From the IMG/VR virus record IMGVR_UViG_3300032287_003113, positions 62,001-126,000 of that record: a stretch of 64,000 nt of DNA. One strand, 5' to 3'. The notes below the pieces were generated by a model. It was not told where the DNA came from, made no database searches, and saw nothing but the letters and a program-made list of their open reading frames with translations. Shown piece by piece: positions 644-57,488 of the stretch (position 1 is its first letter; every line of letters begins with the position of its first letter). A program made the translations under genes and the position numbers.

Positions 644-656
644 ATAAGTATATTTA

Positions 657-2490: not shown

Positions 2491-2861
2491 TTTGGTTTAC
2501 GGATAGGACCTTGAGCTTTAACTGGACTCTTGATGTTAATCAAATCTGTTTCAAACGATCCATCACCGGATTGTTGTTCGGGTGTTATCCCTAGATAATT
2601 CTGTGCAGCACGGATTTTATCATTGTCGGCTTCGCTGTAACCAATGGTAGTGAATCTTCCGCCAATGGGTCCGTAGGGTTTCAATGGTAGGTCAGGTGCA
2701 CCAGCCAATGCAATACCATATCGATAGGCACCGTAGGCATTGTTGTTGTTGTCTAGTTCGTCCCAGGTTTTCAAATTTGGGATAGCACGTATGGCACTGG
2801 GACGCAGTTTTGCACGTCCTGTTTTTGCCTGAGCTTCTTGGATGATTTCTGTTATTTTCAT
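2487..2861 (-). CDS. Hypothetical protein, paralog of 2143..2490; putative internal head protein
   Basis: Start corrected to ATG 2861 (MKITEIIQE), 1 nt after the upstream stop; AIPNL..W...NNNNAYGAYRYG...KSPVKAQGPIRK. Confidence 0.7.
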   Translation of the reverse strand: MKITEIIQEAQAKTGRAKLRPSAIRAIPNLKTWDELDNNNNAYGAYRYGIALAGAPDLPLKPYGPIGGRFTTIGYSEADNDKIRAAQNYLGITPEQQSGDGSFETDLINIKSPVKAQGPIRKPK

Positions 2862-12300: not shown

Positions 12301-12632
12301 TCGGCACGAATAGCATATAACTGATTGCCTAGGCCCAAGGCACTATAAGCTGTCATTAATCCGTATTCGTTTAGTTCGCCAGCGTGTATTGGTGTACCCG
12401 CAGAACTTAGTCGGAATGTGGGTGTGCCCATTGCTGTCACCAAGTCACGCTGACTGGTAAAGCTCTGCAATTTGCCTGCATTGGCTGCAGATGTACCCGA
12501 TGCTATTGCACCGTTATAAGTCTTATCTTGTGCTGTTGCTAATACCACTAGTGGTACTGATCCAACTGCGTTAGATACGTATTGACTCTGATCGTTAATG
12601 GAAATTTGAATTCCTGGGGAAACTAGTGCCAT
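9306..12632 (-). CDS. gp18: Tail sheath protein (enlarged, 1108 aa)
   Basis: MALVSPGIQI N-terminus; C-terminal YPWFAPAG..RG, INPI, WGQET, RVNVVRL, LFEPND, VVCDSSNN, IEPARDVEFIYI. Confidence 0.95.
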   Translation of the reverse strand: MALVSPGIQISINDQSQYVSNAVGSVPLVVLATAQDKTYNGAIASGTSAANAGKLQSFTSQRDLVTAMGTPTFRLSSAGTPIHAGELNEYGLMTAYSALGLGNQLYAIRADIDLDQLVGTSVRPSNTPADGTYWLDSVNTEWGIYSLNRTDVDFDHVTPLVITDSTQVENDNAFAYNVPKPKQSVGAIGTYAIVAVDTDGTNPNVLRLWKKTGTDSVATGTGGPGSNVWVQVGSTAWQLSTPAVTGTIAQPGVTIGQTLVLNGSTVIATGITSTTLASDINTAAITGVKAAAVGGKLVLFCTSAATSGRVTVASGTMNVSTILGITPGTYFAPYLFYGDYAETPSGGWFTTDSQPRPTGSIWWKLGSTGAGLNPIMKKYSSATGTFQALNVPAFLNTDNAVYGLDPIGGGVNIAEGQTIVTYSVNDTTSNGLRFYNHRARTAYEPNGESVAFTGTPTTFTAGNSFSIDYTTPGVEEVGAATTITLSGTTTASFVTDILSANIPYVTASVESNGTIKITHQTGGQLILLDVSGTPLTAAGFAADADGEATKGSGYIKNTVTGAFVISAFNNLTHESQLEITDSAPYAAPANGTYWYYSSAADVDIMINNNGWKGYQNVSSDSRGYNLGNTDPAGVIVTATEPLTQSDASALVAGDLWLDTSDLINYPKLYRYTGTAWAAINTSDQTTSNGIVFADARWDTDGTKDPIVDDLPAITSLLTSNYLDLDAPDYRLYPRGALLFNTRRSGYNVKQYRSNYYNDVSFPDVGANSIGLPTSLPAEAGAWVSSSGLNTDGSMKAGTAAQRAIVVAAMSSAIDSNLEVREDLYQFNLLVAPGYPELIDNLVTLNSDRGDTGFVIGDTPMTLAATSTAINNWNSNTDGNGLATASPYLAVYYPSGVTTDLTGNTVAVPASYSVLRTFLYSDNVSYPWFAPAGTHRGLVSNIQDVGYVDANTGAWTHNSIGQGLRDSLYTMNINPITQLPGVGIVVWGQETKSGTSTARNRVNVVRLENYLRTIFKSISNGYLFEPNDQVTRKSISTQIESALNDILSKRGIYDFLVVCDSSNNTSSTIANNQLYVDVAIEPARDVEFIYIPIALYNPGALASLGTSST

Positions 12633-20791: not shown

Positions 20792-22834
20792 TTAATATCT
20801 CCCTACTGCTATTTCGATAGTTGTTATATCATTGCCGTCATAGTCTTCAAGACTTTTTGCAATTATACAACCTGGTTCATATTTTGTTTTGTCTAAACGT
20901 TCTGCTACACCTGGAATATTGCTGGTAACCAGTCTATCGCCTTTGGCTACTGGTCCACGCACCTGACATGGTACACGGCCTGTGAGTGCCACTGGCAAGC
21001 CAGGTTTGGCAGCATTCATCAGGTATGCTGGATCGGTGCTTACTACTCCAGCTGTTCGCGGATCGTGGCTAACGTCTGTGGTTGTTATTTCTGCGGATCC
21101 ACCAAACACAACTACTGTGCCTGGAGCATATTCCGCATCAGCCACATAGTGTTCTGCTAGGTCAGCATACTTGGCTTGGACGCTGACACCGTACACGTTG
21201 TTCCACCAAGCTGTGGTGGATCCAAGATTGATGGCCAAATTAGATGATGGTACAACAAAACCAGATACTGTGATGTTAGCACAGGTCACTGCACCCAATG
21301 ATGTGGCGCCGGTTACTGTTATGCCTGAAGAAAATGTGTTGGCCTGTGATGCCACAAAACCGCTGGTGTCAACCCACTGGGAGCCAGTGCCATCATATAG
21401 GTATTGGAATACAGTATCACTGGCGCTGTCATACCAGGTGTCGCCAGAATATGGATTGGCTGGTGATGTGGTTCCTGTAAAGTTTGTGACTAATGGTCTA
21501 GTATTACGGAATGCTCCACTACCTACGTTGAGGTTTCCTGTGATTGCAGCTCCACCAGACACCTGCAATGCACCGGTAACGTTGCTGGTACTGGCTGTGG
21601 TATTGGATAGCACCAAGCTACCAAAAATCACATTGCCACGTGTGCCAGAGTTGACACCGCCCAAGGTTTCAGTGGCATCTGCCAAATATTCCAATGCTCC
21701 TGTGGAATTTTCCCATCCCAGGAACGCATGTTTGTCTGCACCTTTGTAGTAGTGGAATCGAACACCGATGTCACGACCATCATCCGACGACAATGCTGCC
21801 AAATTGGCAAATGTGTGTAATTCAATAACTGAGTCAGTGACCGACAAGTTGTTGGAACCAATGGTCACTGTGTTACCCAGCACAGTCAAGTTTCCTTGAA
21901 CTGTCAGCCCGCTTGCATTCCATCCACCAGCTTTGGTTGTTGCTGTACCGGCAAGATTTTCTACGTAAAATTCTAATTCACCGTTGCTGGCGCCTGCACT
22001 GGTTTCTGCCAGAATATAAGTGAATCCGTCAACTGATTTGACTCCACCCAATGAGCTCCAAGCATTACCTGCGCCATAACCTTCAAAACTGCTAATTTGC
22101 GTGTTATATCGTACATGTCCCAGTTGTGGACTGATACTGTTGAGACCACCGCCGGGCCGTTGAGCAGTATTACCTGTTGGCAATGGTACAAACTGTATAT
22201 CACTGTTTAATGTGGTAATGCCATTTAATACACCTGCACTATTACCGCCCAATGGGACTGTGGTGTTACCAAATCTCACGTCAGCTGTGGCCCAACTTGG
22301 TGCATATCCTGCGCCTTCTGAACGCAAGAATGTACCAATTGCACCTGCTGTAATGAAAGTGGTCACGTTGGTGTCTTGCTGAATCATCAACTGACCAGCA
22401 GATCCGCCTGTGATGTTTGTGGCACTGGTCGCTGTGGTGGCTGTACCAACAGTCAGTGCTGATCCAGAAACCCAAGTTGGTGAACTAGTACCACCCGAAA
22501 TAAGAAATTGTCCAGCTGTACCTGCTAGACTTAGGCCCAGTCCAGTTGCAGTACTGTAAGGGACGGCCCCTGCGGCAGCAGTTAATACACTACCAGTTCC
22601 GCCATAGGCCAATGCCACAGCATTACCTTGCCAGAATGATCCACTACTAAAAGTTTTGTTTAATACAGTTTGTGTAGCACCTGTGGTTAATACTGTGGCG
22701 CCGCCGCCTGCTGTAGTTCCGTCGTGTAAACGTAGGGTTTTGGCGTCAGTATCGTAGGTAATTTCACCGGCGGCACCAGTAAAAGCGTTGTTTTGTGTTG
22801 TAGTTCCTCGTCTAAACTGTACTTGGGTTGCCAT
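20792..22834 (-). CDS. Tail fibre-like protein: Mtd-N-like N-terminus and chaperone-like C-terminus
   Basis: QVQFRRGTT...GAAGEITYDTD..TLRLHDG..AGG; C-terminal AKYADLAEHY domain. Confidence 0.75.
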   Translation of the reverse strand: MATQVQFRRGTTTQNNAFTGAAGEITYDTDAKTLRLHDGTTAGGGATVLTTGATQTVLNKTFSSGSFWQGNAVALAYGGTGSVLTAAAGAVPYSTATGLGLSLAGTAGQFLISGGTSSPTWVSGSALTVGTATTATSATNITGGSAGQLMIQQDTNVTTFITAGAIGTFLRSEGAGYAPSWATADVRFGNTTVPLGGNSAGVLNGITTLNSDIQFVPLPTGNTAQRPGGGLNSISPQLGHVRYNTQISSFEGYGAGNAWSSLGGVKSVDGFTYILAETSAGASNGELEFYVENLAGTATTKAGGWNASGLTVQGNLTVLGNTVTIGSNNLSVTDSVIELHTFANLAALSSDDGRDIGVRFHYYKGADKHAFLGWENSTGALEYLADATETLGGVNSGTRGNVIFGSLVLSNTTASTSNVTGALQVSGGAAITGNLNVGSGAFRNTRPLVTNFTGTTSPANPYSGDTWYDSASDTVFQYLYDGTGSQWVDTSGFVASQANTFSSGITVTGATSLGAVTCANITVSGFVVPSSNLAINLGSTTAWWNNVYGVSVQAKYADLAEHYVADAEYAPGTVVVFGGSAEITTTDVSHDPRTAGVVSTDPAYLMNAAKPGLPVALTGRVPCQVRGPVAKGDRLVTSNIPGVAERLDKTKYEPGCIIAKSLEDYDGNDITTIEIAVGRY

Positions 22835-42542: not shown

Positions 42543-43721
42543 TTACTGGAACGATAGGTTTGATACAGAGATCTCACCAACGTAGTCACCAGCATTACCT
42601 AGCGAAGACGCTGTGTTTGTCAACTCTACATAACCATAACGTGTCATAAATGATACGACTGGTTCGAATGTAGATGGATCTAGAACAACACCAGAACTCA
42701 TCAATGGGATATATGGGCAATAGAACGCAGCTGCATCAGCTTCGCTTGAACCCTTATAACCAACCAATACAGCCTGACTGTCGTTTGCATAACCGTCAAC
42801 ATATACCTTCATTGCACCGTTCAATGTACCAACAAACTTGGTGTTTGTAGGAGCTTCGAATGTACCTTCTGTTGTACGAGCAAATGCACTTGTTGTAGCA
42901 CTTTGTAGTACTGTCAAAGCAGCTGGACTTACAACTGCCCAGTTACCAGCACCACGACGTGTACGCTGAGCGATCTTGTTAGCAACACGGTTAACTAGAA
43001 CTGCCAAAGCGGCATGCTCATCACCAACGAATGTAGCTGTACCAGAAACGGCAGCTTGGTCATATGCTTCATCAGTAGCGGCAAGAGCACGTAGGGAACC
43101 AAGAATCTCTTGATCAATCTCTACAGTAATTTCTTGTGCTAGGGCAGCCATAATTTCTGCCTCAACATCCAAACCGTGCATAGACTGTGCGTCTTGTGCA
43201 GCTTCAAATGTCCAACGAGCACTTAACTTACGTGTTTTAGCTTCTACAACTTGTTTCAAAATCTGAACGTTAATACGGTTACCAGCAACACCTTCTAGTG
43301 TACTAGTTGTATTAGCCATACCAGTAGAGTTACTACCAGAGTATGCTGTTGCAATTTTGAATGGGCTCAATGCCTCATCACCAGCTGTTGTGCTTGTCTG
43401 ATATGCAGATGAATCTGTAACAGAATCAGCATAACGTACACGCAATGTGTGGATTTGAGCTACTGGACCTGTCATTGGCTGTACACCAACGATTTCGTTG
43501 GCGATAACTGTTGGCATTACACGACGGATAACTGGTAGAATTACACGGTTTAGTGTAGCTACGTTACCTGCTTGTGTAGAGCCAGCTGTTGCGTTCTCAG
43601 CCAACATTTTGCGTGTATTCTCAAGGATTACACCCATTGTAGTTCTTTTAGAACCATTTAGACCTTCTAACAGGGCTTCTTTTGTTTCGCCCCAACGGCC
43701 TTCTAATAATGCTTGTGTCAT
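42543..43721 (-). CDS. gp23: Major capsid protein
   Basis: GVQPMTGP, VEAKTRKL.A.WT.E.AQD...HGLD.E.E, EIDQEI, FYCPYIPL, P.TFEP...MTRYG. Confidence 0.97.
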   Translation of the reverse strand: MTQALLEGRWGETKEALLEGLNGSKRTTMGVILENTRKMLAENATAGSTQAGNVATLNRVILPVIRRVMPTVIANEIVGVQPMTGPVAQIHTLRVRYADSVTDSSAYQTSTTAGDEALSPFKIATAYSGSNSTGMANTTSTLEGVAGNRINVQILKQVVEAKTRKLSARWTFEAAQDAQSMHGLDVEAEIMAALAQEITVEIDQEILGSLRALAATDEAYDQAAVSGTATFVGDEHAALAVLVNRVANKIAQRTRRGAGNWAVVSPAALTVLQSATTSAFARTTEGTFEAPTNTKFVGTLNGAMKVYVDGYANDSQAVLVGYKGSSEADAAAFYCPYIPLMSSGVVLDPSTFEPVVSFMTRYGYVELTNTASSLGNAGDYVGEISVSNLSFQ

Positions 43722-46825: not shown

Positions 46826-48520
46826 TTAAAGTGCTGGCTGTGCGCCGGCTGGACTAGGTGCGCCTGGAACTGCGCCACCTAAATCAGGACCGCCGGGTGC
46901 GGCACCCGGTGCCGTTTCAGGACCCAGTCCTTCTAGATCGTTTTGCAAACCGCCCGGACTGATGCCCACGCTACGTAGACCTGGAGCTTCGGGCTGTGCT
47001 AATTCGGCGTCGCCACGTTCTTCGGCCCATGCTGTTTCATTTTCACTGATTTCTTGTTCGGTCATGCCCAAATAACGCTTCATCAACCAACGCTTGCTTA
47101 GATACGGATACTGTTCTAGCTGTGTAAATGTGCCAATACGTGCAGCATCAATGTCGGCTTGACGATACTGTGCAAAGTTTTGTGGTTCATTGAAGCTTAA
47201 ATCAAACAAGCTACCGTCAATGTTAAATCCACGCCAACGCATAAACAGCTTGAACTCTGAGTCCAGCTTGTCAGCAATCATGCTTTGTAAACGCTGGCAA
47301 TATTGATTGAACCGCCATTCTTGGATCAGTGCTGTGCCCACACGTCCGTCTGTGTAGGCTGCTGTACCGTCTTCGGCTGTGGTAGGCAAATAACTGCTGG
47401 GAATACGCAGGCCACGGAACAGCTTGTTGGTAAAGAAGCGTAAGTCTGTGATTTCGCCTAGATTTTGGCCGCCGGGTAGGACGTCTACACTGGATCCACG
47501 ACCGTCTGCTGTGGTTGGAAAGAAGTAGTCTTCGTTTGTGCTCAAGGGATTGTATGTGGCATCCATCATGTTGGCACCACCACCCGATTGTGTGGGAATA
47601 CGACGCTGATGTATTTCGTTTTTGATACGTTCCACAAAGGCCATGGCCATGTGTGTGGGCATGTTACCTACGTCAATTTTGAATATTCTACGCTCTGGAG
47701 CACGCTGCACACGGTAGATAATGATCGAATCTTCTAGCAGTTCTTTTTGTTTAAACACTTTGAAAATGTTTTCTAGTACTGAGTTACCAAATGGCCAGTA
47801 TACGTCCAAGCCTTCAGTTAGGCTGATATGTACCACATGTTCAGCATTGAGAGCAGCTTCGTTTTGAGCATGACTGAAACGTGAGCCGCCGCCAAATGGA
47901 CTTTGCGGTTGTGTGTAACTACCCGATGGACCACCCACCTGCGGATGATTCATGTAGGTGTCTGTTGTTGCCACTGCTGTGACTGTTAAGTTTTGAAAGT
48001 TGGGGTTTAGGTCTTTGATCAAGTACTGTTCAGGTTTTTTGCCTTCGCCTTCGTTCACAATGACCTTGGTAACTTTTGACATTTCTGTCCAGTACAGCTT
48101 GAAGTTTTCTGGATCACGTATAAACACTTGGTCGCCATACTTGAATGTGTTGCGAACAATTTTAAAAACACGCTTGTTCAGTTCGTTTAGGCTGACCCAC
48201 TGTTGCAGTTGCTCTTTGATGATTTTTACTTCGTTGTCCGACGGAGTTTCTTTGTACTTGATGGTAAATGCTGTGTGATTTTCTTGATTTTTTTGAGTGC
48301 AAAACTCGGCCAGTATGTCTAGTGCGGCATTGACTTCTGAGTCCATGTCCATTTGTTCGTACTGATTGTAGCGTTCAACACGATTGGGTTGTCCGGTATA
48401 AACTTCAGGTAATTGACTTTGGTAATTACGGAATCCAGGATCTGGAGCACGTCCAGCACCCAAAGGGCTTACGTTGCTGGGTAAGTTACTAGTCTTAAAA
48501 TATTTTTTCCAACCGGCCAT
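46826..48520 (-). CDS. gp20: Portal protein
   Basis: LLEDSIIIYRVQRAPERRIFKIDVGNMP, EDYFFP, LPGGQNLGEITD, LRIPSSYL; TATAAATA at 48541-48548. Confidence 0.97.
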   Translation of the reverse strand: MAGWKKYFKTSNLPSNVSPLGAGRAPDPGFRNYQSQLPEVYTGQPNRVERYNQYEQMDMDSEVNAALDILAEFCTQKNQENHTAFTIKYKETPSDNEVKIIKEQLQQWVSLNELNKRVFKIVRNTFKYGDQVFIRDPENFKLYWTEMSKVTKVIVNEGEGKKPEQYLIKDLNPNFQNLTVTAVATTDTYMNHPQVGGPSGSYTQPQSPFGGGSRFSHAQNEAALNAEHVVHISLTEGLDVYWPFGNSVLENIFKVFKQKELLEDSIIIYRVQRAPERRIFKIDVGNMPTHMAMAFVERIKNEIHQRRIPTQSGGGANMMDATYNPLSTNEDYFFPTTADGRGSSVDVLPGGQNLGEITDLRFFTNKLFRGLRIPSSYLPTTAEDGTAAYTDGRVGTALIQEWRFNQYCQRLQSMIADKLDSEFKLFMRWRGFNIDGSLFDLSFNEPQNFAQYRQADIDAARIGTFTQLEQYPYLSKRWLMKRYLGMTEQEISENETAWAEERGDAELAQPEAPGLRSVGISPGGLQNDLEGLGPETAPGAAPGGPDLGGAVPGAPSPAGAQPAL

Positions 48521-48553: not shown

Positions 48554-50956
48554 TTACGCTGTAGCGTTGAAGATTTTTTCCGAAGTGTCTCTGTGGTCTT
48601 TCATAACCGAAATCATTTGATCCAATCGTTCAATCATTTCGTCCATTCCAGGTAAACGTCCATTTTTAAGTGGTGCAATCACTTCGCTGGCACCACCTTC
48701 GGCTACTTTTACGTTGACACCGCCTGTGGTAGCTGGTACAACTGCACCTTGTGCGGCTGCCACTTCAGCATGTATGTGTGGTCCCCAGACTTTTGCTTTC
48801 TCAGGATTGGCCGGTTTTATGCTTTCATCTAATACTTGGCTAAATCCGCCCATACTTTTTAATTTGGCCACTACCTCAGGATATTGTTTTAGATCGTTTA
48901 GCACCAGATCAAACGCACGACCGGAACCATGAGCAACACTATCGTCTATTCCTCGATCTTTGAAACCGCTAAAATGTTTGTAATTTCCACCCAGCATAGC
49001 ATGAACCTGTTGGGCCATTTGCATAATTGTTGCGTTGCCTTGTTGCTCTTCTCTGTCAAATCCTGATTTAATTTTGAGACCAGTGGCTGTTACTACCGGT
49101 TCGCTGCTGCTTTTTCCTTTGTTAAATCTCTCTCTGCGTTGATCAAATACCGATTTAGCTGGGCTTTGAAACGGTGCTGCTGGTGTACCAGCTGTAGGGC
49201 CACTGGGAGGAGGTGTTCCTGGTGTTAAACTTTTAATTGCTGCGTCTAGGTCTAATTTTTTTAATGCTTTTTCTATTGTGTCTACTCCGGCTGCAGTAAC
49301 TTGAGCAAATCTAGTAAGAGGCGTCAGCAAGGACTCGCCTAGTGCAGCTTTTAGTCGCTGAGTATCTTCTTCTAGTCCTTGCACAGCCTTGTCCAATGGC
49401 AACATATTGTCGGCCATTTTGTCAGCGTTTTTTCTAGCTTTTTCTGTGGCACCTTCTTGTCGCTTGAGTTGTTCTAACACTTCCTGATTTGCAAATGTAG
49501 CAATATCATTGTATTGACCGGTTAATCTAGCAGCTCGGTTAATAGCTTCAAATATGCCTGGATTTTCTCTTGCATATTTCAATGACTGCTCGCTGAGCTT
49601 GCCAGTTTCAATATTAACTTCTTCAACACTTTGATTCTGATTTCTTATCATTGCCACTTGTTGATCTATCTGCTCCCTTAACCTTGGGTTGTTAGCCAAC
49701 GCCAAATTGAATGCAGTATCAGTAGATGCTCCAGCTGAGTACACTTCCATGAAGCCTTTTTTGTACACATCGGGCATAGTGGCCAATATGCGTTGCATTT
49801 TTTCAACACCCACGGCGCCACCTTCTCTAGTAGCTTTAGCCAATACGTCTACTTCCATGGCCTGAGTTCGTGCCTTTTCCATGGCTTTTTTGGCATCTTG
49901 ACCTGTGATGTCTGAAATAATACGCAGTTCTTTACCATATTGCATGGTGATTTCTGCTATCTGGCGATCACTCAGTGCTCTGCGATCTCCAGCTGCATTT
50001 TGACGTGCCATAACCTGTGCAGCCAGTTCAGCCTGTTCTTCAGCACTATATCCTAGATTACGCAGTTGTATACCCAGTTGACTGTTACGCAACTCTCGGC
50101 TGATTCCGCCAATTCTCCTTGTGGCTTCTCCTAGCCCAAGACCCATATTGGTAAAATCTTCTCTGGCATTTTTTACCACTGTGGCCAGCTGGGCAATGTC
50201 CAATCCAGCTCTGGCAGCTTCTTGTCGCATTTCGGTCATGCCGCCGGCAAAAATTGCACCAGCACTGGTTATGTCTTTGAACCCGGCTTGCGTTTTCTTG
50301 AGTTCGTCGCCTAAAAACTCTACACCGTCCTTGACTTTTTCTGCACTCTTGCCAATTAAAAATTCGCCCAGCTTGCCAAGACCGGCTACCACCAATCCAA
50401 TTGCTCGACCCCACGGTCCCATCAATGCAATAATAAGTCCAGCTGTTTCGGCTACACCACCCAAGGCTTTACTAGCTGCTACACCAGCATCAATTGTTTT
50501 TAAACTGGCTTTGGTTGCTGCTTCAACACCAGATGCACCCGATTGCAAACTTTTTGCAAAATCCCGTGTGCCTTCGTAGATGGTCTGTGCTAGTGATCCA
50601 ATACCTGTACCTAAATTGGACAAGCCGGCACTGACGTTTTTTGTTATTGCTGTTTTCTTTAAATCTGCCTTGCTTGATTCAAGTTCATCTACACGTTCAG
50701 CATTACGAGATTTTTTTGCTTCTTTGATGGCACGATTTAACTCGTCCATTTCTCTGACCACGTTTTGAATAGGTTGTTTGGTACCATCTAAAAAATCACC
50801 AAAGCCTTTGAGTACTGGTTGCTGTCGTTTGAGATTGTCAGTAAATGCTTTGATGTGTTTTTGAAAGTCTTCAACATTTTTTGGATCAAAGGTGGCCTTG
50901 TTGCCAGTCAATTGCTCAATTTTTGCTAAAAACTCTTCTGCGGTCATGTTACTCAT
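48554..50956 (-). CDS. Tape-measure-like protein with C-terminal metallopeptidase-like domain
   Basis: Long Ala/Gly/Gln-rich helical body; HGSGRAFD...PHIHAE; VAEGGASEVIAPL tail; adjacent to gp26. Confidence 0.7.
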   Translation of the reverse strand: MSNMTAEEFLAKIEQLTGNKATFDPKNVEDFQKHIKAFTDNLKRQQPVLKGFGDFLDGTKQPIQNVVREMDELNRAIKEAKKSRNAERVDELESSKADLKKTAITKNVSAGLSNLGTGIGSLAQTIYEGTRDFAKSLQSGASGVEAATKASLKTIDAGVAASKALGGVAETAGLIIALMGPWGRAIGLVVAGLGKLGEFLIGKSAEKVKDGVEFLGDELKKTQAGFKDITSAGAIFAGGMTEMRQEAARAGLDIAQLATVVKNAREDFTNMGLGLGEATRRIGGISRELRNSQLGIQLRNLGYSAEEQAELAAQVMARQNAAGDRRALSDRQIAEITMQYGKELRIISDITGQDAKKAMEKARTQAMEVDVLAKATREGGAVGVEKMQRILATMPDVYKKGFMEVYSAGASTDTAFNLALANNPRLREQIDQQVAMIRNQNQSVEEVNIETGKLSEQSLKYARENPGIFEAINRAARLTGQYNDIATFANQEVLEQLKRQEGATEKARKNADKMADNMLPLDKAVQGLEEDTQRLKAALGESLLTPLTRFAQVTAAGVDTIEKALKKLDLDAAIKSLTPGTPPPSGPTAGTPAAPFQSPAKSVFDQRRERFNKGKSSSEPVVTATGLKIKSGFDREEQQGNATIMQMAQQVHAMLGGNYKHFSGFKDRGIDDSVAHGSGRAFDLVLNDLKQYPEVVAKLKSMGGFSQVLDESIKPANPEKAKVWGPHIHAEVAAAQGAVVPATTGGVNVKVAEGGASEVIAPLKNGRLPGMDEMIERLDQMISVMKDHRDTSEKIFNATA

Positions 50957-51031: not shown

Positions 51032-51883
51032 ATGGAAAATGCTATTCAAAACCCTTTAGTCAAGTACTTTAGACAGCCGTCAATCTACTTAAAATTGCCA
51101 TCAAACGGTCAATATTGGAAAGAAGGGGCAGTAAATTTACCAGTAACTGGGGAAATTCCTGTGTACCCAATGACTGCCAGGGACGAAGTTACTTTGCGTA
51201 CTCCTGATGCACTCATGAACGGAGCTGGCGTTGTTGACGTAATACACAGTTGTTGCCCCAATATCACAGATGCTTGGAGTATGCCCAGCGTGGATGTGGA
51301 TGCTGTGTTGATCGCTATCAGGATTGCCAGTTACGGTGCAGAAATGCCAGTTGATACCAGTTGCCCCAATTGCGGTGCAGAAAACACCCACAATGTCGAT
51401 TTGAGTGTGAGACTATCGGGAATCACTTGTCCAGACTACAACAAAAAAATCAGTTTACCCGATGAGTTGCATGTAAAATGCACGCCGCAGGCATATTTCA
51501 GTGTTAATAGAAAAAATACCATATCGTTTGAAGAACAACGGCTAGTACAGGCCCTAGAACAAACTGATGAAAACTCAGAACAACGCATGTCACAAATTGC
51601 CGACAGCATGACCCGATTGATACAGATCAGCATAGACACAGTAACAGACAGCACCGAGTACATTGAAATGCCCGACGGAACCCGTGTTACAGATAAAGAA
51701 TTTATCAAAGAGTTTTATAGCAATGCTAATGGCAGCGTTGTACGTAACGTACAAGAACAACTGGCTGAAATCAACAACCAAGGCGCCGTCAAGGATCAAT
51801 CAGCTGAGTGCAACGAGTGTAAAACTGAATATAAAATTCCTATCATGTTTGACTACGCAAATTTTTTCGCAATCGGCTCCTGA
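51032..51883 (+). CDS. gp26: Baseplate hub / tail assembly chaperone (gp26-like)
   Basis: LKLPS.G, PMTARDE, D.DA.LIAIRIASYG, CPNC...CNEC, ends ANFF. Confidence 0.8.
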   Translation: MENAIQNPLVKYFRQPSIYLKLPSNGQYWKEGAVNLPVTGEIPVYPMTARDEVTLRTPDALMNGAGVVDVIHSCCPNITDAWSMPSVDVDAVLIAIRIASYGAEMPVDTSCPNCGAENTHNVDLSVRLSGITCPDYNKKISLPDELHVKCTPQAYFSVNRKNTISFEEQRLVQALEQTDENSEQRMSQIADSMTRLIQISIDTVTDSTEYIEMPDGTRVTDKEFIKEFYSNANGSVVRNVQEQLAEINNQGAVKDQSAECNECKTEYKIPIMFDYANFFAIGS

Positions 51884-52098
51884 CATTAGACAATGACGCC
51901 GTCGTAAAACTGTTGGAATCTTACGATAAAGAGTCGAGAGCCGTTAAAAAAGAAGCGTTGCAAATGGCCTGGTACATGCGAGGTGGGTTGACCTATAACG
52001 ATGCTATGGCACTGAGCTCATCAGAACGAGAGATAATTGGTGAAATAATTAAAAAGAACATGGAAACTACAGAGAAATCGGGATTACCATTCTTCTAA
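51853..52098 (+). CDS. gp51-like/GT-like chaperone C-terminal domain, probably made as a frameshift fusion to gp26
   Basis: No SD-supported start (track uses TTG 51913); AWYMRGGLTYNDAMALSSSEREII resembles the small post-gp26 proteins. Confidence 0.65.
   Translation, partial: LRKFFRNRLLTLDNDAVVKLLESYDKESRAVKKEALQMAWYMRGGLTYNDAMALSSSEREIIGEIIKKNMETTEKSGLPFF
51859..51868 (+). other. Candidate -1 ribosomal frameshift slippery site
   Basis: A AAT TTT TTC in the gp26 frame; -1 frame open from 51853 to 52098. Confidence 0.7.
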
Positions 52099-52099
52099 C

Positions 52100-52567
52100 T
52101 GATTTAAGATTAGCTACGCTAATCTATTGATTTCGCTTTGCTCATCAATGTTTTTCTTCTTTGTTGCTTTTCCGTATTATCCAGATTAATTGGTCACAAT
52201 TCACCGTATGCACGGTGAACATGATTGAGCATTATCCGAGTAGCACAGTCATTTATTATAAAGAGATTGTATTTACATACGCAGAGGCGGTTGACCGGTA
52301 CCCCTTACTCTAGCTTCACATATCAACGGAACCCTAGTGACCCGATAATAAATCCAAGTCCTATAAGCTGGGGTTGTATCTTTTTCACATAGCCCCGACC
52401 ATTTTTTGCCTTAAGTTAGCATTAGCCTTGCACACCCGAGCAACATCTAGACTGGGTATCTCACCAGTCCGCAACGGGAGTCGAGCTGCCTCGACCAAAC
52501 AGAGTGCGAATTCCATAATAAGAATATAACTTTGTGTTTATTGCAGAATGACTTTGAGTCGAGTGTG
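52100..52567. ncRNA. Candidate large structured non-coding element (strand uncertain)
   Basis: Largest ORF-free gap in the window; at least 8 stems and a 9-bp long-range helix 52251-59/52345-53. Confidence 0.55.
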
Positions 52568-52996
52568 CTAAATCTTGTTGATAATATGTGAGCCATGTAC
52601 ACGGACCTGTATGTGTCCGTTATAATAATCTTCGGTTTCTAAAACTCTGCGAGCAAATTGTTCTCTCGCCTCGATGTAACTACATTCAGATTTACTTTTG
52701 CAGTAGTATAGTATTTCTCTACTGAAATTGTCAACACCCAATGCAACCACATCTTTTGTTAATTCTGGACTGGAACCATAGTATGTTTGCCAGTCTGAAT
52801 CAATTTTACCACGAATCTTCTTGCGTTTCTTTTTACCATTTTTTAGTTTGACCATTCGGTAAGTGGTCTTGCTAAATTTTGCAAGTTTTTTGCCAATATA
52901 CTTCCGGCCGGTTAGGTTATTTGTGATCAAATAAACAAAACCAACACAATCTTCGGGTAGCGTTTCTACTTGAGTATTTTCGTAAATCCATGACAT
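52568..52996 (-). CDS. GIY-YIG endonuclease, T4 EndoII (DenA)-like
   Basis: GFVYLITN..TGRKYIGKK...SDWQTYYGSS...F.REIL...E...YYNG. Confidence 0.8.
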   Translation of the reverse strand: MSWIYENTQVETLPEDCVGFVYLITNNLTGRKYIGKKLAKFSKTTYRMVKLKNGKKKRKKIRGKIDSDWQTYYGSSPELTKDVVALGVDNFSREILYYCKSKSECSYIEAREQFARRVLETEDYYNGHIQVRVHGSHIINKI

Positions 52997-53042: not shown

Positions 53043-54812
53043 TTAAACAATGTCTACGTCAGTGTTGTAGCTGGTGTACCCGTTTTCTTTGACCACGTGA
53101 AGCGTGTTGTTTACCCGCCCTGCCAATTCATCCTTGTGCGACACCAACCAAATACTCTTGTTAGCTTCGCGACTCATCTTTTTCAGGATAGCCAGACTGT
53201 TTTCTACGCCTGAGCTATCCATACCGCTGTCTACTAACTCGTCGATAAACAACAAGTTAATGGGTTGATATAGGCTTTCCCAAACATCGCGGAAGCTCCA
53301 GCTCAAGGATAAAATCAAGCGATTGCGTTCTCCGCGACTTAGATTGTCAAAGTCCAAATCTCTACCTAACTCTGTAATGGCTACAGTCAAATCATTGTTG
53401 AACTTGACTGTGTGTGGTAAGCCAATACGGTCCAGGTATTGTCCCAAGCGGGCATTTAAATAACTTAAATTCTGATCAATAATACGTTTACGAATAAATG
53501 AATCTTTGTTGGTCAGCAGTTTGAGCAGGAACTCTTGATGTTCTCTAATGTTATTGAGTTCGTTGATCACATCAAAACTGACTTCTTCTACGCCTTGTGT
53601 TTGCATTTCTGCTATTTGCTCAGCATACGGATCTTGTTCAACTGCCTTGATTTCCAACTGTTGAATCAAGTTATCAACGCTTGCTTGATGATGAATAGCA
53701 TCCGACTCTTTGTCATAAAACGTTTCGGGCCGTGGTCCTAGCTTGCCCAGCCCATCGTGAGCTGACTGTAATTCACCCAGAGTGGCAGCAAAGGCATCCG
53801 CTGCTTCCTTTGCTCCAGCCAAGTCTCTCTGCTTTTGTCCCAGTACTGATTGGTGCTTCTCGTCATGGAAATCCTGTCCACAGGTATGGCACGTATGATT
53901 TTCCAACGAAACAAGTTCTGCTGATATCTTGCCAATCGTTTTTTCCTCACGGGAAAGGTCCAGTTTTGTGCGACCAATCGCCGACGATAGTTCATTGATA
54001 TCCTTGCGAGTTTGATCCCATGTCTTGAACGCTTGGTGTGCCTGAATCTCGGCCTGGATGTCAATTCTCTGAAGCTCTTCAATTCCTGTCTGTAATTTCT
54101 GTATATCTTCTGCATGTTTATTCACCCATAGCGTTTGCCTACGCTTCAACGCTTCGATCTGTTCTTCAATACGCCGGTTGGCATCGCCCACAGCCTTGAT
54201 ACGAAACTCTTCTTGTGTGATGGCATCTTTGGTTGCTTTGCCAGCCTCCTTTAGTTTGTCTGCTTTTTCACTTAGCAATGTAATACCAAGTAATTGCTCA
54301 ATTATAGTACGCTGGTCATTGGCTTTGAGTGCCAAGAATGGTTCTGTGTAGGTGTTGAGAGCCACAATGTGCTTGAACATGTCGTGACTCATGCCCAGCA
54401 TACGTTCTATTTCTTGCTGTGTTTCTCGGCTGTCGCCTTGTGCATCATCTGTGATTTCTTGTTCGCTATCGCCAACAAAGAATTTCATAGTGTTAGGTTT
54501 ACGTCCACGTTCTATCCTGTAGCTGACACCTTCTTTTTCAAAATCAATTGTGACCATCATGTTTTTGGCATTGGTCTTGTTGATCAAGTTATCTTTTTTA
54601 ATGTTAGTAAGTGCGTTGCCGTACAAGGCATAGCTCAATGCATTGATAATAGTGGTTTTACCTGTACCGTTACGTGCACCGGAGTCGTCTCCGCCTAGGT
54701 CTAAATTTTCACCCAACACCAGAGTCAAGTCTTGTCGATCAAAATTAACTGCCTGTGTGGTATTGCCCACACTCATAAAGTTTTTAACAGTAAGGTCTTT
54801 TATTTTAAACAT
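53043..54812 (-). CDS. gp46: Recombination ATPase (Rad50/SbcC-like)
   Basis: KNFMSVGN, NGTGKTT, CHTC zinc hook, LSRGE signature, LLFIDELVDSGMD, VSH. Confidence 0.95.
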   Translation of the reverse strand: MFKIKDLTVKNFMSVGNTTQAVNFDRQDLTLVLGENLDLGGDDSGARNGTGKTTIINALSYALYGNALTNIKKDNLINKTNAKNMMVTIDFEKEGVSYRIERGRKPNTMKFFVGDSEQEITDDAQGDSRETQQEIERMLGMSHDMFKHIVALNTYTEPFLALKANDQRTIIEQLLGITLLSEKADKLKEAGKATKDAITQEEFRIKAVGDANRRIEEQIEALKRRQTLWVNKHAEDIQKLQTGIEELQRIDIQAEIQAHQAFKTWDQTRKDINELSSAIGRTKLDLSREEKTIGKISAELVSLENHTCHTCGQDFHDEKHQSVLGQKQRDLAGAKEAADAFAATLGELQSAHDGLGKLGPRPETFYDKESDAIHHQASVDNLIQQLEIKAVEQDPYAEQIAEMQTQGVEEVSFDVINELNNIREHQEFLLKLLTNKDSFIRKRIIDQNLSYLNARLGQYLDRIGLPHTVKFNNDLTVAITELGRDLDFDNLSRGERNRLILSLSWSFRDVWESLYQPINLLFIDELVDSGMDSSGVENSLAILKKMSREANKSIWLVSHKDELAGRVNNTLHVVKENGYTSYNTDVDIV

Positions 54813-54821
54813 AGGTTCTTA

Positions 54822-56111
54822 TTATATACTAAAATCTTGATCTAGCCAAGCAAAATGAGCTCGCCAATTGGTATTGCGTCTTTGGTCCAGGGTTGTCAGA
54901 TATGTTTTTAATTTATCGATTTGACTGACATTATTTTTAGATGCTAAACTTGTGGTAGCAATACCTTGCATGGCCTTACGCTGTGCTTGCTGTGTGGGAG
55001 TAGTATCGGGCATCAACTTCAATATCTGGTCAAAGTCGTTGGCAAACACAGCACCATCGAACAAATATGGATTATCAAATTCTCCGGACGTATTAAAACT
55101 GTGAATGATGGGTTCTGCTGCCCATTCCCGTTGGAACCATGTGGCTGTGGCTGTTTGTTTGGTATTCCAGTGATTGATACGTTCCAATAACTTGGGCAAC
55201 GATTTAATAGTCAAGGCTGATACAGCACTATTAATGCTTAAGGATATCCATGGCTGATTCAACAGCAATTCAAAGTTACGTTGCCATTGTGCTAGGTCGA
55301 GCCCATAGCGAACATATTCCTGCTCACTGTCCCAACAATCTAAACTGGCAGTGATTTGCAGTTTCCATATTTTGTTTGACAGCACCAATTTTCTAAATTG
55401 CTGTAAGTATCGTTCAAATCGTGGTGTGGGTATGTTTAGATTGGTTACTACACTAAAAATTAAATCGGGATTGGCATGAGTTTGCCAAAACTCAATGCTG
55501 TCGTCTAGTTCGGTCATTAAAAACGGCTCACCACCTAAAATATGATACCGTTTGATTGCTTTGTAACGATCGTTTTCGTTCAAGTATTGCCATAGACCTG
55601 CAACCATTTGATCATAGTGGTCATTGTGTTGTGCTTGTTTGATGTCAAACGTTCGAGTGTGAAATGAATCTCCAAACTTTCTATTTTCTTCTTCCCACAG
55701 GCTGCTATGATGCGGCCCACAGTATACGCATTTCATATTACAGGTATTTTTAAAATAAACTTCCAGTATGGTAGGAGTAACAGTTGTGGATGATTCATCT
55801 GTGTCAAGCTCGGGCGGCACCAACCACCCGTTATCTTGCTGTAGCGTACTTTGTCTATCACTTAAGCCACCTGCATCTTCTACGTTTTTGCAATATTCAC
55901 AACCAGCCCTGGGCCACGCACCTGCAAGCATGGTGTTTCTAGCTGAAATTTTTTCAGGCAAATTATGAAATGATGCAAAGTTGTCGGCTGGTATGGCATA
56001 TTTTTCTGTGCGGTGACAACTGGCACTAGTACCACTGTTAAAGTAGACGGTGCTCCATGCCCATTTTAATAAACAAGCAGATTCTGTGCGTATGGGAAAC
56101 ACTTTATTCAT
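54822..56111 (-). CDS. Radical SAM protein with extra N-terminal Cys cluster
   Basis: CNMKCVYC (CxxxCxxC), LGGEPF, TN; N-terminal C..KW...SCH...CEYC. Confidence 0.85.
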   Translation of the reverse strand: MNKVFPIRTESACLLKWAWSTVYFNSGTSASCHRTEKYAIPADNFASFHNLPEKISARNTMLAGAWPRAGCEYCKNVEDAGGLSDRQSTLQQDNGWLVPPELDTDESSTTVTPTILEVYFKNTCNMKCVYCGPHHSSLWEEENRKFGDSFHTRTFDIKQAQHNDHYDQMVAGLWQYLNENDRYKAIKRYHILGGEPFLMTELDDSIEFWQTHANPDLIFSVVTNLNIPTPRFERYLQQFRKLVLSNKIWKLQITASLDCWDSEQEYVRYGLDLAQWQRNFELLLNQPWISLSINSAVSALTIKSLPKLLERINHWNTKQTATATWFQREWAAEPIIHSFNTSGEFDNPYLFDGAVFANDFDQILKLMPDTTPTQQAQRKAMQGIATTSLASKNNVSQIDKLKTYLTTLDQRRNTNWRAHFAWLDQDFSI

Positions 56112-56472
56112 ATAATATATGATTCATGGGCAACTCTTCTTGTGGATTGTATCGTTTGCGTACATATTCTAATTCTTCTGGCAACGACTTGATATCAGTT
56201 ATCACAACGATAAAAAAATGTGGAATGTCGTGATGTTGCACATATTCCTGCAACGAGATCAAGATATCGTGCGGTTGATCGGCATAGGATTTTTTCAATG
56301 GCTGGTTAGCAACAAAGACCACACGCTCATTGTCAGCAAACACTTCCTTGTGCAATCGTCGCAAGGCAGTATATAGTTTACCCTTTGGCAAGTTATCAAA
56401 CTCAGTTAAGTCAATGAAATTGTCAATTTGATACTGAGTTTGCAGTCGATGTTTAATCCGTGCCAGGATCAT
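56104..56472 (-). CDS. Hypothetical protein
   Basis: 122 aa, overlaps gp47 and the radical SAM gene. Confidence 0.6.
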   Translation of the reverse strand: MILARIKHRLQTQYQIDNFIDLTEFDNLPKGKLYTALRRLHKEVFADNERVVFVANQPLKKSYADQPHDILISLQEYVQHHDIPHFFIVVITDIKSLPEELEYVRKRYNPQEELPMNHILYE

Positions 56473-57488
56473 AAGTTTCTATAAATGTCCAACAGGAGAT
56501 TTTTATTAAACTGTTCACTGTCAATGTTGCTCAACTGTCCGTACACAATCTGATCCACTGACTCAAATGCTATATTACCTTGTATTTCATATTCAGTCAA
56601 GTCTGTGACTTTGGCAGGGATCAGTGTAATCTCACGCAGTTTATACGTGTCAATAAAAGTTTCTTTGATAAAAGTGGCTTCTTCGTAGCTGATGTCAATA
56701 TCCAAGTTAACCCTAACATGCATGTTGGGTTTGAGCATGACTTCGGTGTGTTTGAGCACATCGCTCAGTTGAAACACACGATATATGGGCTGATCGGGCC
56801 AAGCATGATACACTGGCTCTTTGTCCCACTCTAGAATCATCATGCCACGATCATCGTCGCCGGCATCGGCATAGTTGTGCGGAAAGCAGTTGCCCAAATA
56901 GGTAATGTTGCCTTTGGTCTGTCGTTTGTGGAAGTGCCCAGAGAACACATGTTCAAAACCTTTTAAATCATTTTTAGGATCAACTTCACCATGATCCGGC
57001 ATGGCTACCATGGCATTCATCAAGTATCCGGGCAATTCAAAATGCCCAAACATGTACTTGCCTCGTAGTTTCTTTAGACGTTTGAAGTCATCGCCCACTA
57101 GCCACGGAGCAATAGTAACGTCGCCATGAGTAGTCCAGTCGTTACAGATATGTATTCTATTAAGGTGCTTTGCCCATTCCACACTCTGTACATCTCGCTT
57201 GTCGCGATAATACAGATCATGATTTCCAGGAATAAAGAAAGTTTGTTCGAAGTTTTCATTCAAGTGCTCCAGGGCACGTAGACTATAGCCCAAGGTTAGG
57301 ATATTGATTGACGCACGATTGTTGTGCCAGTCTCCAAGAAACATGCAAGTTTCGCATCCTTCTTCCCGTGCCTTGGCAGTGGCCCATTTAACAAAGTTCA
57401 AACAGTCCTCGTTGTGTAAGGTACTGTTTGATTTTAACCCAAAGTGTATGTCTGTAAAGACGGCGGCTCGTTTGAATAGATTAGTCAT
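56469..57488 (-). CDS. gp47: Recombination nuclease (Mre11/SbcD-like)
   Basis: TDIHFG, LGDW, PGNHD, GHFE, SGHFH metallophosphoesterase motifs. Confidence 0.95.
   Translation of the reverse strand: MTNLFKRAAVFTDIHFGLKSNSTLHNEDCLNFVKWATAKAREEGCETCMFLGDWHNNRASINILTLGYSLRALEHLNENFEQTFFIPGNHDLYYRDKRDVQSVEWAKHLNRIHICNDWTTHGDVTIAPWLVGDDFKRLKKLRGKYMFGHFELPGYLMNAMVAMPDHGEVDPKNDLKGFEHVFSGHFHKRQTKGNITYLGNCFPHNYADAGDDDRGMMILEWDKEPVYHAWPDQPIYRVFQLSDVLKHTEVMLKPNMHVRVNLDIDISYEEATFIKETFIDTYKLREITLIPAKVTDLTEYEIQGNIAFESVDQIVYGQLSNIDSEQFNKNLLLDIYRNL

What the first reader, a model, noticed from the sequence alone, without database searches (positions are those of the whole stretch)
51850..52098. Lambda G/GT-style programmed -1 frameshift in a T4-like gp26 chaperone gene
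Seen: gp26 ends GCA AAT TTT TTC GCA ATC GGC TCC TGA, which contains two overlapping in-frame X-XXY-YYZ heptamers (A AAT TTT and T TTT TTC). The -1 frame has a TGA at 51850-52, opens immediately before the slippery run, and stays open to 52098 (FRNRLLTLDNDAVVKLLESYDKES...AWYMRGGLTY...LPFF). That downstream ORF has no SD-supported start. Known: tail-assembly chaperone pairs beside tape-measure genes (lambda G/GT) use this arrangement, whereas T4-type gp26/gp51 are normally treated as separate genes. Inference: the phage makes a 283-aa protein and a ~355-aa fusion. The tape-measure-like gene is the adjacent divergent gene.
Basis: partly seen in the sequence, partly recalled or inferred. Interest (0 to 1): 0.85.

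Follow-up and report, generated by a model that had tools for sequence, protein, structure and literature searches.

The report
Frameshifted gp26-type tail chaperone gene
A giant T4-related phage almost certainly makes a short and a long version of its gp26-type tail-assembly chaperone by a programmed -1 ribosomal slip on T_TTT_TTC; this is real and widely conserved, but the principle was already published for T4-like phages in 2022.

Summary
The 283-aa ORF 51032..51883 belongs to the T4 gp26/gp51 family (Pfam PF12322). It ends with T_TTT_TTC (51862-51868), and an open -1 frame runs to 52098.

Evidence that this is a programmed -1 frameshift giving a ~355-aa fusion:
- In 102 of 103 related loci (89 distinct) the heptamer sits in the same register. 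The preceding codon varies but always ends in T.
- The -1 ORF of 70-82 codons is conserved from its first post-shift codon. It has no conserved start codon.
- A ~10-bp stem starts 6 nt after the heptamer and shows compensatory changes.
- About 20 metagenomic relatives encode the same two parts as one in-frame protein. At least one of these follows a short paralog in tandem.

T4 itself has the two-gene form. gp26 and gp51 both match PF12322, and the gp51 tail matches the -1 ORF of a cyanophage.

The neighbouring 800-aa gene is a tape measure only by synteny.

Two papers cite Vladimirov et al. (Virology 2022) for T4-like chaperone genes with poly-T slip sites or separate short and long genes. 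I could not read that paper. I therefore score this as a well-supported new member of a known kind. None of the jumbo-phage records I opened annotates it.

The parts
51032..51883 (+). gp26-type (PF12322) chaperone gene, 0-frame product of 283 aa (the short form)
   Evidence: Pfam T4_baseplate E=1.1e-18, 68 bits against a cutoff of 24.5. PHROG 150 'baseplate hub' E=2e-22. 2842 homologs in the protein database. Two conserved Cys pairs and an invariant C-terminal FF.
51862..51868 (+). Slippery heptamer T_TTT_TTC, the proposed -1 shift site. P-site TTT re-pairs with TTT and A-site TTC re-pairs with TTT.
   Evidence: In register in 102 of 103 loci: 85 distinct TTTTTTC and 4 TTTTTTT. The preceding codon varies over 9 types and always ends in T. 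Baseline third-position T is 34% and TTC among Phe codons is 28%.
51859..51865 (+). It is probably incidental.
   Evidence: Present only where the preceding codon is AAT (34 of 89 distinct sequences).
51850..51852 (+). TGA that closes the -1 frame three codons upstream of the shift site
   Evidence: In 63 of 89 relatives the -1 frame opens exactly 3 codons before the heptamer.
51868..52098 (+). -1 frame extension, 76 codons plus stop. It is the C-terminal domain of the ~355-aa long form.
   Evidence: Conserved from the first post-shift codon, with R-x-R-L-L and the W-Y-M-R-G-G motif. No conserved start codon. First codon is CGN with free wobble. The same domain is fused in frame in about 20 natural proteins.
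51874..51884 (+). 5' arm of a candidate frameshift-stimulating stem (CGGCTCCTGAC), starting 5-6 nt after the heptamer
   Evidence: The MFE fold pairs it with 51933-51943. Family-wide, 84.8% of cells are paired against 25-55% in slid controls, with 0 of 500 shuffles as good.
51933..51943 (+). 3' arm of the stem (GTCGAGAGCCG). It closes a ~48-nt loop. In this window there is one C.A mismatch and one G.U pair.
   Evidence: Compensatory pairs C-G 26 / U-A 26, Fisher p=2.5e-9 without correction for phylogeny. Stems with the same spacing but different sequence occur in Atu_ph07, Phosso, XacN1, Xoo-sp13 and PA5oct.
52107..52125 (+). Terminator-like hairpin 9 nt after the extension's stop codon
   Evidence: Consensus scan only, and the T tail is weak.
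48554..50956 (-). Divergent 800-aa neighbour, a putative tape measure protein (inference only)
   Evidence: The order portal / 720-832-aa protein / divergent gp26 is conserved in RaK2, 121Q, PA5oct and Phosso. RaK2's record calls its copy tape-measure-like. There is no significant family or pairwise match.

Best explanation
Gene 51032..51883 encodes a gp26/gp51-family tail (hub and tube) assembly chaperone.

Most ribosomes terminate at TGA 51881-83 and make the 283-aa short form. A minority slip back one base on T_TTT_TTC (51862-68), where both tRNA-Phe can re-pair. The slip is probably promoted by an RNA stem that begins 5-6 nt downstream (51874-84 paired with 51933-43). These ribosomes then read 76 further codons to 52098, giving a ~355-aa long form with an added helical C-terminal domain.

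By analogy with lambda G/GT and P2 E/E+E', the shared N-terminal body would coat the tape measure or hub. The rarer long form would add a second contact, for example to the tube or hub, in a fixed ratio.

Shown here: the slip site, the frame relation, the coding conservation of the extension, the covarying stem, and natural fusions or paralog pairs.

Inferred: that the slip actually occurs, its efficiency, and the binding partners.
For: - Family identity: PF12322 hit.
- Heptamer conservation: in register in 102 of 103 loci, with synonymous-site constraint.
- Range of isolates with the same architecture: RaK2, 121Q, PA5oct, GAP32, Serratia BF, XacN1, Xoo-sp13, RAS14, SCTP-2, RsoM2USA, Vibrio 2.275.O, Atu_ph07, Phosso, cyanophage S-WAM1 and Agrobacterium phage OLIVR5.
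- Extension: the -1 ORF is 70-82 codons in all, while the +1 frame is short. Homology starts at the first post-shift codon. The first ATG lies anywhere from -14 to +56, or is absent.
- Which frame is under selection: the first post-shift codon is CGC/CGG/CGA/CGT (Arg). The same bases read in the 0 frame give 16 different codons. R-x-R-L-L is retained in all 21 sequences whose 0-frame stop lies two codons after FF.
- Stem: covariation supports it, and analogous stems of different sequence occur in distant clades.
- Natural fusions: about 20 proteins of 319-351 aa, with junction F-R-x-K-L-I.
- Tandem paralogs: a short and a long gene in L105, and probably L106.
- Structure: the AF2 model of a natural fusion has pLDDT 95 and pTM 0.90, with a helix spanning the junction.
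- T4: gp26 and gp51 both match PF12322. The gp51 tail (200-244) aligns with the cyanophage -1 extension from the junction F onward, BLASTP E=1e-5.
- Literature: papers citing Vladimirov et al. 2022 describe the same idea.
Against: - No protein-level or ribosome-profiling evidence exists for any of these phages.
- In this window the stem has a C.A mismatch, and its fold energy is not unusual (z = -1.26).
- RNAalifold alone found no consensus structure.
- Several isolates (RAS14, SCTP-2, RsoM2USA, Serratia BF) show no significant stem.
- Possible start codons overlap or lie near the 0-frame stop, so some reinitiation cannot be excluded. These are TTG in 40 of 85 relatives, ATG in Atu_ph07, Phosso and the cyanophages, and CTG in this window.
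- FF is itself a conserved protein motif. It is present in T4 gp26 as the non-slippery TTC TTT, so part of the T-run is explained by coding.
- The fold matches no solved chaperone structure.
- The gene is not in the canonical tube / chaperone / tape measure order.
Confidence: 0.87

Rival explanations
1. The downstream ORF is a separate small protein. It would be made by independent initiation, or by termination-reinitiation at a start codon overlapping or near the gp26 stop (NTGA-type coupling), and not by frameshifting.
For: - GenBank records annotate small separate ORFs in 121Q, GAP32, Serratia BF, XacN1, SCTP-2, Phosso and Xoo-sp13.
- Atu_ph07 and Phosso have ATG overlapping the stop as ATGA.
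- 40 of 85 relatives have TTG at extension codon 5, overlapping TGA.
- Cyanophage ORFs are called from an ATG 5 codons after the slip site.
Against: - No start codon is conserved in position or type. Two sequences have none. This window has only CTG there, then TTG 15 codons in, with no Shine-Dalgarno motif.
- Codons upstream of any candidate start are under -1-frame purifying selection (CGN Arg, AGG/CGG Arg).
- The heptamer and its T-ending preceding codon would then have no explanation.
- Natural in-frame fusions show that the two parts work as one chain.
- The junction lies inside a predicted helix.
Confidence: 0.08
2. The long form arises by transcriptional slippage of RNA polymerase on the T6 run (loss of one U or gain of two) and not by ribosomal slippage.
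For: A homopolymeric T6-T7 run is present in every case. Slippage-prone runs are used this way in some bacterial and IS genes (review PMC5009743).
Against: - From my own knowledge, not tested here: a run of 6 is short for efficient polymerase slippage, and documented cases use about 8-9 or more.
- The run never expands beyond 7 across 89 sequences.
- It is always in X_XXY_YYZ register, although FF coding partly forces this.
- A covarying stem at the classical 5-7 nt spacing points to a ribosomal mechanism.
Confidence: 0.04
3. The open -1 frame and the T run are coincidental, and only the 283-aa protein is made.
For: FF is a conserved protein motif even in T4 gp26, which has no extension. The short paralog in L105 keeps T_TTT_TTC although its -1 frame closes after two codons.
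Against: The extension is conserved as protein across clades that share only 24-35% gp26 identity. The extension profile has 478 database relatives at E<=1e-3. It occurs fused in frame in nature.
Confidence: 0.01

Closest known systems
T4-like phage tail assembly chaperones gp26/gp51 (Vladimirov, Gautam & Davidson, Virology 2022; known to me only through citing papers PMC10885494 and PMC12846349)
   Same: Same protein family (PF12322). Same short-plus-long logic. Poly-T slip site at the end of the N-terminal gene in T4-like phages. T4 itself carries a short gene (26) and a longer fused paralog (51).
   Different: This window is from a ~357-kb jumbo phage, only 24-35% identical to isolates of the RaK2, PA5oct and Atu_ph07 groups. 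Its extension is of the W-Y-M-R-G-G type and has no Pfam model. The link to the gp51/cyanophage type is weak (hhalign prob 45%, E 2e-4). I could not read the 2022 paper, so I do not know whether jumbo phages or the downstream stem were covered.
Phage lambda G/GT tail assembly chaperone frameshift
   Same: A -1 slip on an X_XXY_YYZ heptamer a few codons before the stop of the upstream ORF. The extension ORF has no start of its own. The result is two products sharing an N-terminus. T4 was long listed as the exception to this arrangement (PMC5009743).
   Different: No sequence or fold similarity to known chaperone families. The protein is about twice as large and has two conserved Cys pairs that suggest zinc binding. 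The heptamer is U_UUU_UUC and not G_GGA_AAG. The gene diverges from the putative tape measure gene instead of preceding it.
Phage P2 E/E+E' (myovirus chaperone frameshift; from my own knowledge, not checked here)
   Same: A contractile-tailed phage with a -1 slip on a T6-type heptamer near the end of the chaperone gene.
   Different: P2 E is small and sits between the tube and tape measure genes. It is an unrelated family.
Cyanophage 'gp51-like' small ORFs after gp26 (precomputed Pfam PF28602.1)
   Same: Same position, same heptamer and -1 frame (S-WAM1). The tail is homologous to the T4 gp51 C-terminus.
   Different: These have an ATG 5 codons after the slip site and are routinely annotated as free 61-aa proteins. 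Sequence similarity to the window's extension was not detectable directly.

Membership tests
Pfam PF12322 T4_baseplate (T4 gp26/gp51 family) | HMM match above the gathering score over most of the model | tested here: met
   68.2 bits against a cutoff of 24.5, residues 34-280 on model 14-219. T4 gp26 scores 215.6 bits and gp51 177.5 bits against the same model.
Pfam PF12322 T4_baseplate (T4 gp26/gp51 family) | Two conserved Cys pairs and a C-terminal FF motif | tested here: met
   C111, C114, C260 and C263 are nearly invariant and F278 F279 are invariant in 23 diverse sequences. T4 gp26 ends ...CPECG...EFFELL.
Pfam PF12322 T4_baseplate (T4 gp26/gp51 family) | Shared fold with other gp26-type proteins | tested here: met
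   The AF2 model of a natural fusion relative (pLDDT 95) matches BFVD 'baseplate hub (assembly) proteins' at E down to 1e-16 and TM 0.66-0.80.
Programmed -1 frameshift tail-assembly-chaperone system (lambda G/GT type) | [quoted passage not shown] | tested here: met
   T_TTT_TTC/T in 102 of 103 loci.
Programmed -1 frameshift tail-assembly-chaperone system (lambda G/GT type) | Overlapping -1 ORF that is conserved as protein and lacks its own conserved start | tested here: met
Programmed -1 frameshift tail-assembly-chaperone system (lambda G/GT type) | Gene lies directly upstream of the tape measure gene, after the tube gene | tested here: not met
   In the window the gene diverges from the putative tape measure, and the sheath gene is ~40 kb away (9306..12632). 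The canonical order sheath / tube / gp26-like / small ORF / tape measure is seen only in Bacillus phage HSE3.
Programmed -1 frameshift tail-assembly-chaperone system (lambda G/GT type) | Sequence or fold homology to known chaperone families | tested here: not met
   No chaperone family in Pfam or PHROGs. No PDB sequence match. Best Foldseek PDB hit E=0.14, TM 0.12.
Programmed -1 frameshift tail-assembly-chaperone system (lambda G/GT type) | Both products are made at a fixed ratio, bind the tape measure and tube proteins, and are absent from virions | not testable with these tools
   Needs proteomics and biochemistry. T4 reviews list gp26 and gp51 as hub assembly chaperones (PMC3004832).
T4 gp51-type long form | C-terminal extension homologous to the gp51 tail (residues ~200-249) | tested here: inconclusive
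   Cyanophage extension against gp51: BLASTP E=1e-5. Jumbo-isolate extension profile against the cyanophage/gp51 profile: prob 45%, E 2e-4 at the Y..M.P.ER motif. Window-type profile against the cyanophage/gp51 profile: not significant.

The most novel reading that the evidence does not exclude
Two things may go beyond the published T4-like case.

1. The gp26/gp51 family has a fold unrelated to any solved chaperone. Its short/long, frameshift-based expression could then be either a very ancient feature or a convergent reinvention of the lambda G/GT logic. It spans jumbo phages, cyanophages and Agrobacterium phages, with repeated replacement of the frameshift by gene duplication (T4, L105).

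2. The shift may be driven by a conserved long-range stem closing a ~48-nt loop. Both arms of this stem also encode conserved residues of the extension (R-L-L-T and E-S-R/K-A). That would be an unusually clear natural example of RNA-structure and protein co-constraint in a frameshift stimulator.
Probability: 0.35. Interest if true: 0.55.

Novelty: new member of a known kind. Interest (0 to 1): 0.4.

Why it matters
- **Annotation.** It corrects a whole clade of jumbo phages used in phage-therapy and biocontrol research, including RaK2, K64-1, 121Q, PBECO4, PA5oct, GAP32, Atu_ph07 and XacN1. In the records I opened, the extension is either left blank or called as a truncated hypothetical ORF.
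- **The T4 question.** It adds independent comparative support for the view that T4's long-puzzling 'hub assembly' proteins gp26 and gp51 are the missing counterparts of lambda G and GT. T4 was listed as the exception to the conserved tail-chaperone frameshift in a 2016 review (PMC5009743).
- **A test system.** The covarying stem and the three interchangeable solutions (frameshift, tandem paralogs, divergent paralogs) offer a clean way to ask why phages need a fixed short:long chaperone ratio.

Tried and rejected
- Nucleotide search of the region against isolated phages found nothing. Protein-level searches were needed.
- Rfam and tRNA scans of the window found nothing.
- RNAalifold on 48 aligned sequences predicted no structure. 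The stem was found by eye and then tested with explicit pair counts.
- PDB sequence searches with the gp26 and extension profiles, and a Foldseek PDB search with a high-confidence model, gave no meaningful match. I therefore do not file the protein with lambda-type chaperone families.
- Attempts to show that the 800-aa neighbour is a tape measure all failed or gave only marginal scores: Pfam, PHROGs, PDB, and BLASTP against RaK2 ORF088, T4 gp29 and the Phosso neighbour.
- Direct profile comparison of the window-type extension with T4 gp51 or with cyanophage extensions was not significant.
- The Vladimirov 2022 paper is not held.
- Several literature searches for gp26 plus frameshift in RaK2-like phages returned nothing relevant.

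Full report
**1. The observation**

The + strand ORF 51032..51883 (283 aa) ends GCA AAT TTT TTC GCA ATC GGC TCC TGA. The -1 frame has TGA at 51850-52 and is then open for 81 codons, to the stop at 52096-98. The first ATG/GTG/TTG in that frame is TTG at 51913, and no Shine-Dalgarno-like purine run precedes it.

**2. What the gene is**

- The 283-aa protein matches Pfam PF12322 T4_baseplate (E=1e-18, above the curated cutoff) and PHROG 150 'baseplate hub'.
- The window is the structural region of a T4-superfamily jumbo phage. It carries a gp20-type portal (46826..48520), a gp23-type major head protein (42543..43721), a 1108-aa sheath (9306..12632), gp46- and gp47-like genes and a SegE-like endonuclease.
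- An identical gp26 gene lies on a 356,865-bp IMG/VR contig.

**3. Comparative test of the frameshift**

A tblastn search with the -1 ORF hit Atu_ph07, Phosso, Xoo-sp13 and RAS14. In each, the match begins inside the 3' end of the gp26 homolog, in its -1 frame.

I then collected 80 IMG/VR loci with a gp26 profile, 9 more with the single protein, and 15 isolate regions. Scripts gave these results:

- **Heptamer.** Of 103 loci with a complete 3' end, 102 (89 distinct) have T_TTT_TTC (85) or T_TTT_TTT (4) in register at an invariant FF.
- **Codon choice.** The codon before FF is AGT, AAT, CAT, GCT, ACT, CGT, GAT, GTT or TAT, and always ends in T. Third-position T is 34% in the rest of the gene and TTC is only 28% of Phe codons.
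- **Extension.** The -1 ORF is 70-82 codons everywhere (76 in 64 of the 85 complete distinct sequences). The +1 frame is short.
- **0-frame tail.** It is 1 to 11 codons long and variable.
- **Starts.** The first ATG/GTG/TTG in the -1 ORF lies anywhere from codon -14 to +47. Two sequences have none.
A_AAT_TTT is present only where the preceding codon happens to be AAT.

**4. Which frame is under selection just after the heptamer**

- The first post-shift codon is CGC (39), CGG (19), CGA (16) or CGT (10). That is Arg with a free wobble base. The same bases read in the 0 frame give 16 different codons for A, G, V, D, E and R.
- The third post-shift codon is AGG or CGG in 67 of 85 sequences.
- In the 21 sequences whose 0-frame stop falls only two codons after FF, R-x-R-L-L is still intact downstream of that stop.

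This argues against a start further downstream, including the TTG (CTG in this window) that overlaps the TGA.

**5. RNA element**

RNAalifold found nothing. By eye, however, GGCTCTTGAC, starting 6 nt after the heptamer, is the reverse complement of GTCAAGAGCC about 48 nt further on. Explicit pair counting on 48 sequences gave:

- 84.8% of cells paired, against 25-55% when the partner is slid by 1-3 columns.
- 0 of 500 shuffles as good.
- 8 of 10 pairs with double changes.

At one pair, C-G (26) alternates with U-A (26). Here a synonymous Leu CTC/CTT change is matched by an Arg/Lys AGA/AAA change (Fisher p=2.5e-9, not corrected for phylogeny).

Distant isolates have stems at the same 5-7 nt spacing but with different sequences:

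| Phage | Stem |
|---|---|
| Atu_ph07 | 10 bp |
| Phosso | 10 bp |
| XacN1, Xoo-sp13 | 11 bp |
| PA5oct | 11 bp |
| Vibrio phage 2.275.O | 8 bp |

RAS14, SCTP-2, RsoM2USA and Serratia BF have no significant stem.

In the window the stem is 51874-84 with 51933-43. It has one C.A mismatch, and its overall fold energy is unremarkable (z = -1.26). The stem is therefore supported family-wide and is merely plausible in this particular copy.

**6. Natural fusions and paralog pairs**

A profile of the extension found 478 relatives (E<=1e-3) among 1.84 billion representative proteins. Most are small ORFs of 40-100 aa. About 20 of the 150 hits listed are proteins of 319-351 aa in which the extension is the C-terminal 76 residues of a PF12322 protein.

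- Their junction reads D-x4-F-R-x-K-[LI]-[LI], with a single F. The one fusion gene whose DNA I read has no T run there (AGT TTC CGT in L105).
- On contig L105 the fused 346-aa gene follows directly after a 294-aa short paralog that ends ...TSFFND. L106 looks the same.
- AlphaFold2 on fusion P0146 with a 40-sequence alignment gave pLDDT 95 and pTM 0.90. A helix (266-275) runs through the junction, and the extension forms three further helices.

The two pieces are therefore one protein in some lineages, and both the short and the long form are kept.

**7. T4 itself**

- T4 gp26 (208 aa) ends EFFELL. Its FF is encoded TTC TTT, which is non-slippery, and gene 25 follows directly.
- T4 gp51, the divergent neighbour, also matches PF12322 (E=4e-52, residues 1-201 of 249). 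gp26 scores E=9e-64.
- The remaining gp51 tail (200-244) aligns from its junction F onward with the -1 extension of cyanophage S-WAM1 (BLASTP E=1e-5).
- S-WAM1 and Agrobacterium phage OLIVR5 both have T_TTT_TTC and a -1 ORF of 72-75 codons after gp26. OLIVR5's record calls that ORF 'baseplate hub assembly catalyst', which is the gp51 name.
- The jumbo-phage extensions are clearly related to one another (hhalign prob 94-96%). Their link to the cyanophage/gp51 type is weak (prob 45%, E 2e-4, same motif position).

**8. Comparison with what is known**

The arrangement works like lambda G/GT. A 2016 review states that G-T frameshifting is conserved in long-tailed phages 'except T4' (PMC5009743). 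T4 reviews list gp26 and gp51 as hub assembly chaperones of unknown mechanism (PMC3004832).

Two papers cite Vladimirov, Gautam & Davidson (Virology 2022) on this point:

- PMC10885494 cites it for T4-like phages that carry a short gene and a longer fusion gene instead of frameshifting.
- PMC12846349 cites it for poly-T slip sites in the 'TAC-N' genes of T4-like phages.

I could not obtain that paper. The concept is therefore already known.

Membership in the lambda-type chaperone families is not supported. There is no Pfam, PHROG or PDB sequence match and no Foldseek PDB match. BFVD matches are only gp26-type proteins. The gene order is also non-canonical here. Bacillus phage HSE3 does have sheath / tube / gp26-like / small ORF / tape measure.

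**9. The neighbouring gene**

The divergent 800-aa gene is syntenic with proteins of 720-832 aa in RaK2, 121Q, PA5oct and Phosso. These sit between the portal gene and gp26. PA5oct's copy is virion-associated by MS, and RaK2's is annotated as tape-measure-like.

I found no significant similarity to any tape measure family, to T4 gp29, or even to the RaK2 and Phosso proteins. Its identity as a tape measure is an inference.

**10. Verdict**

The rivals are separate initiation or reinitiation (about 0.08), transcriptional slippage (about 0.04) and coincidence (about 0.01).

It is a new, unannotated member of a kind already described for T4-like phages. What may be new:

- Its extent across jumbo phages.
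- The covarying downstream stem.
- The tandem short/long paralogs in metagenomic lineages.

Noticed in passing
L104 (T4 NC_000866 114500-123500): gene 26 at 1303..1929 (-), gene 51 at 1980..2729 (+): T4 gp26 and gp51 are paralogs; both match PF12322 strongly. The extra C-terminal ~48 residues of gp51 align with the -1 extension of a cyanophage gp26 gene. T4 thus encodes the short and long forms as two divergent genes.
   Followed up: yes
L105 820..1704 and 1704..2744; L106 3..95 and 97..1116 (Logan metagenome contigs): Tandem short (294 aa) and long (346 aa, in-frame fusion) PF12322 paralogs. The short one still carries T_TTT_TTC, but its -1 frame closes after two codons.
   Followed up: partly
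L103 (Bacillus phage vB_BceM-HSE3) 2474..3401: A gp26-like gene sits in the canonical chaperone slot (sheath, tube, gp26-like, 56-aa ORF, tape measure). FF is encoded TTC TTT with no -1 heptamer. The small ORF lies in the +1 frame, open from 3177 and overlapping the gp26 end, and resembles the extension only weakly (hhalign E 0.04). This could be a +1 shift or a separate start.
   Followed up: partly
L094 4350-4713 (RaK2); L096 4362-4584 (PA5oct); small ORFs in L095, L097, L098, L099, L102, L002, L003: Public records of RaK2 and PA5oct leave the extension region unannotated. Other jumbo-phage records call a truncated 'hypothetical protein' that starts inside the conserved extension. None of the records opened annotates a frameshift.
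   Followed up: yes
L107 3160-3363 (cyanophage S-WAM1) and proteins P0271-P0390: Thousands of cyanophage 61-aa ORFs after gp26 carry a precomputed Pfam domain, PF28602.1. That model is absent from the local Pfam copy, so I do not know its name. S-WAM1's record leaves the ORF unannotated.
   Followed up: partly
window 52099-52567 and 52568..52996 (-): A ~470-nt stretch with no convincing ORF lies between the extension's stop and a SegE-type GIY-YIG homing endonuclease gene. No Rfam family or tRNA was found there. A terminator-like hairpin lies at 52107-52125.
   Followed up: partly
window 48554..50956 (-), C-terminal ~140 residues: The putative tape measure ends with an H-x6-D ... H-x-H pattern (AHGSGRAFD ... 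HIH). This is reminiscent of LAS-type zinc peptidases and might be a tail-associated lysin domain. No Pfam or PHROG match supports it.
   Followed up: no
window 54822..56111 (-): A 429-aa ORF lies between the gp46-like (53043..54812) and gp47-like Metallophos (56469..57488) genes. It contains a C-x3-C-x2-C motif (CNMKCVYCG) that suggests a radical-SAM-type iron-sulfur site. It has no Pfam hit at E<=1e-5.
   Followed up: no
window 20792..22834 (-): A 680-aa protein begins with an Mtd_N domain (major tropism determinant N-terminal domain, E=3e-13). It is presumably a fibre or receptor-binding protein. I did not check for a diversity-generating retroelement.
   Followed up: no
window 9306..12632 (-): The tail sheath homolog is unusually long (1108 aa). 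Only its last ~100 residues match the sheath C-terminal domain.
   Followed up: no
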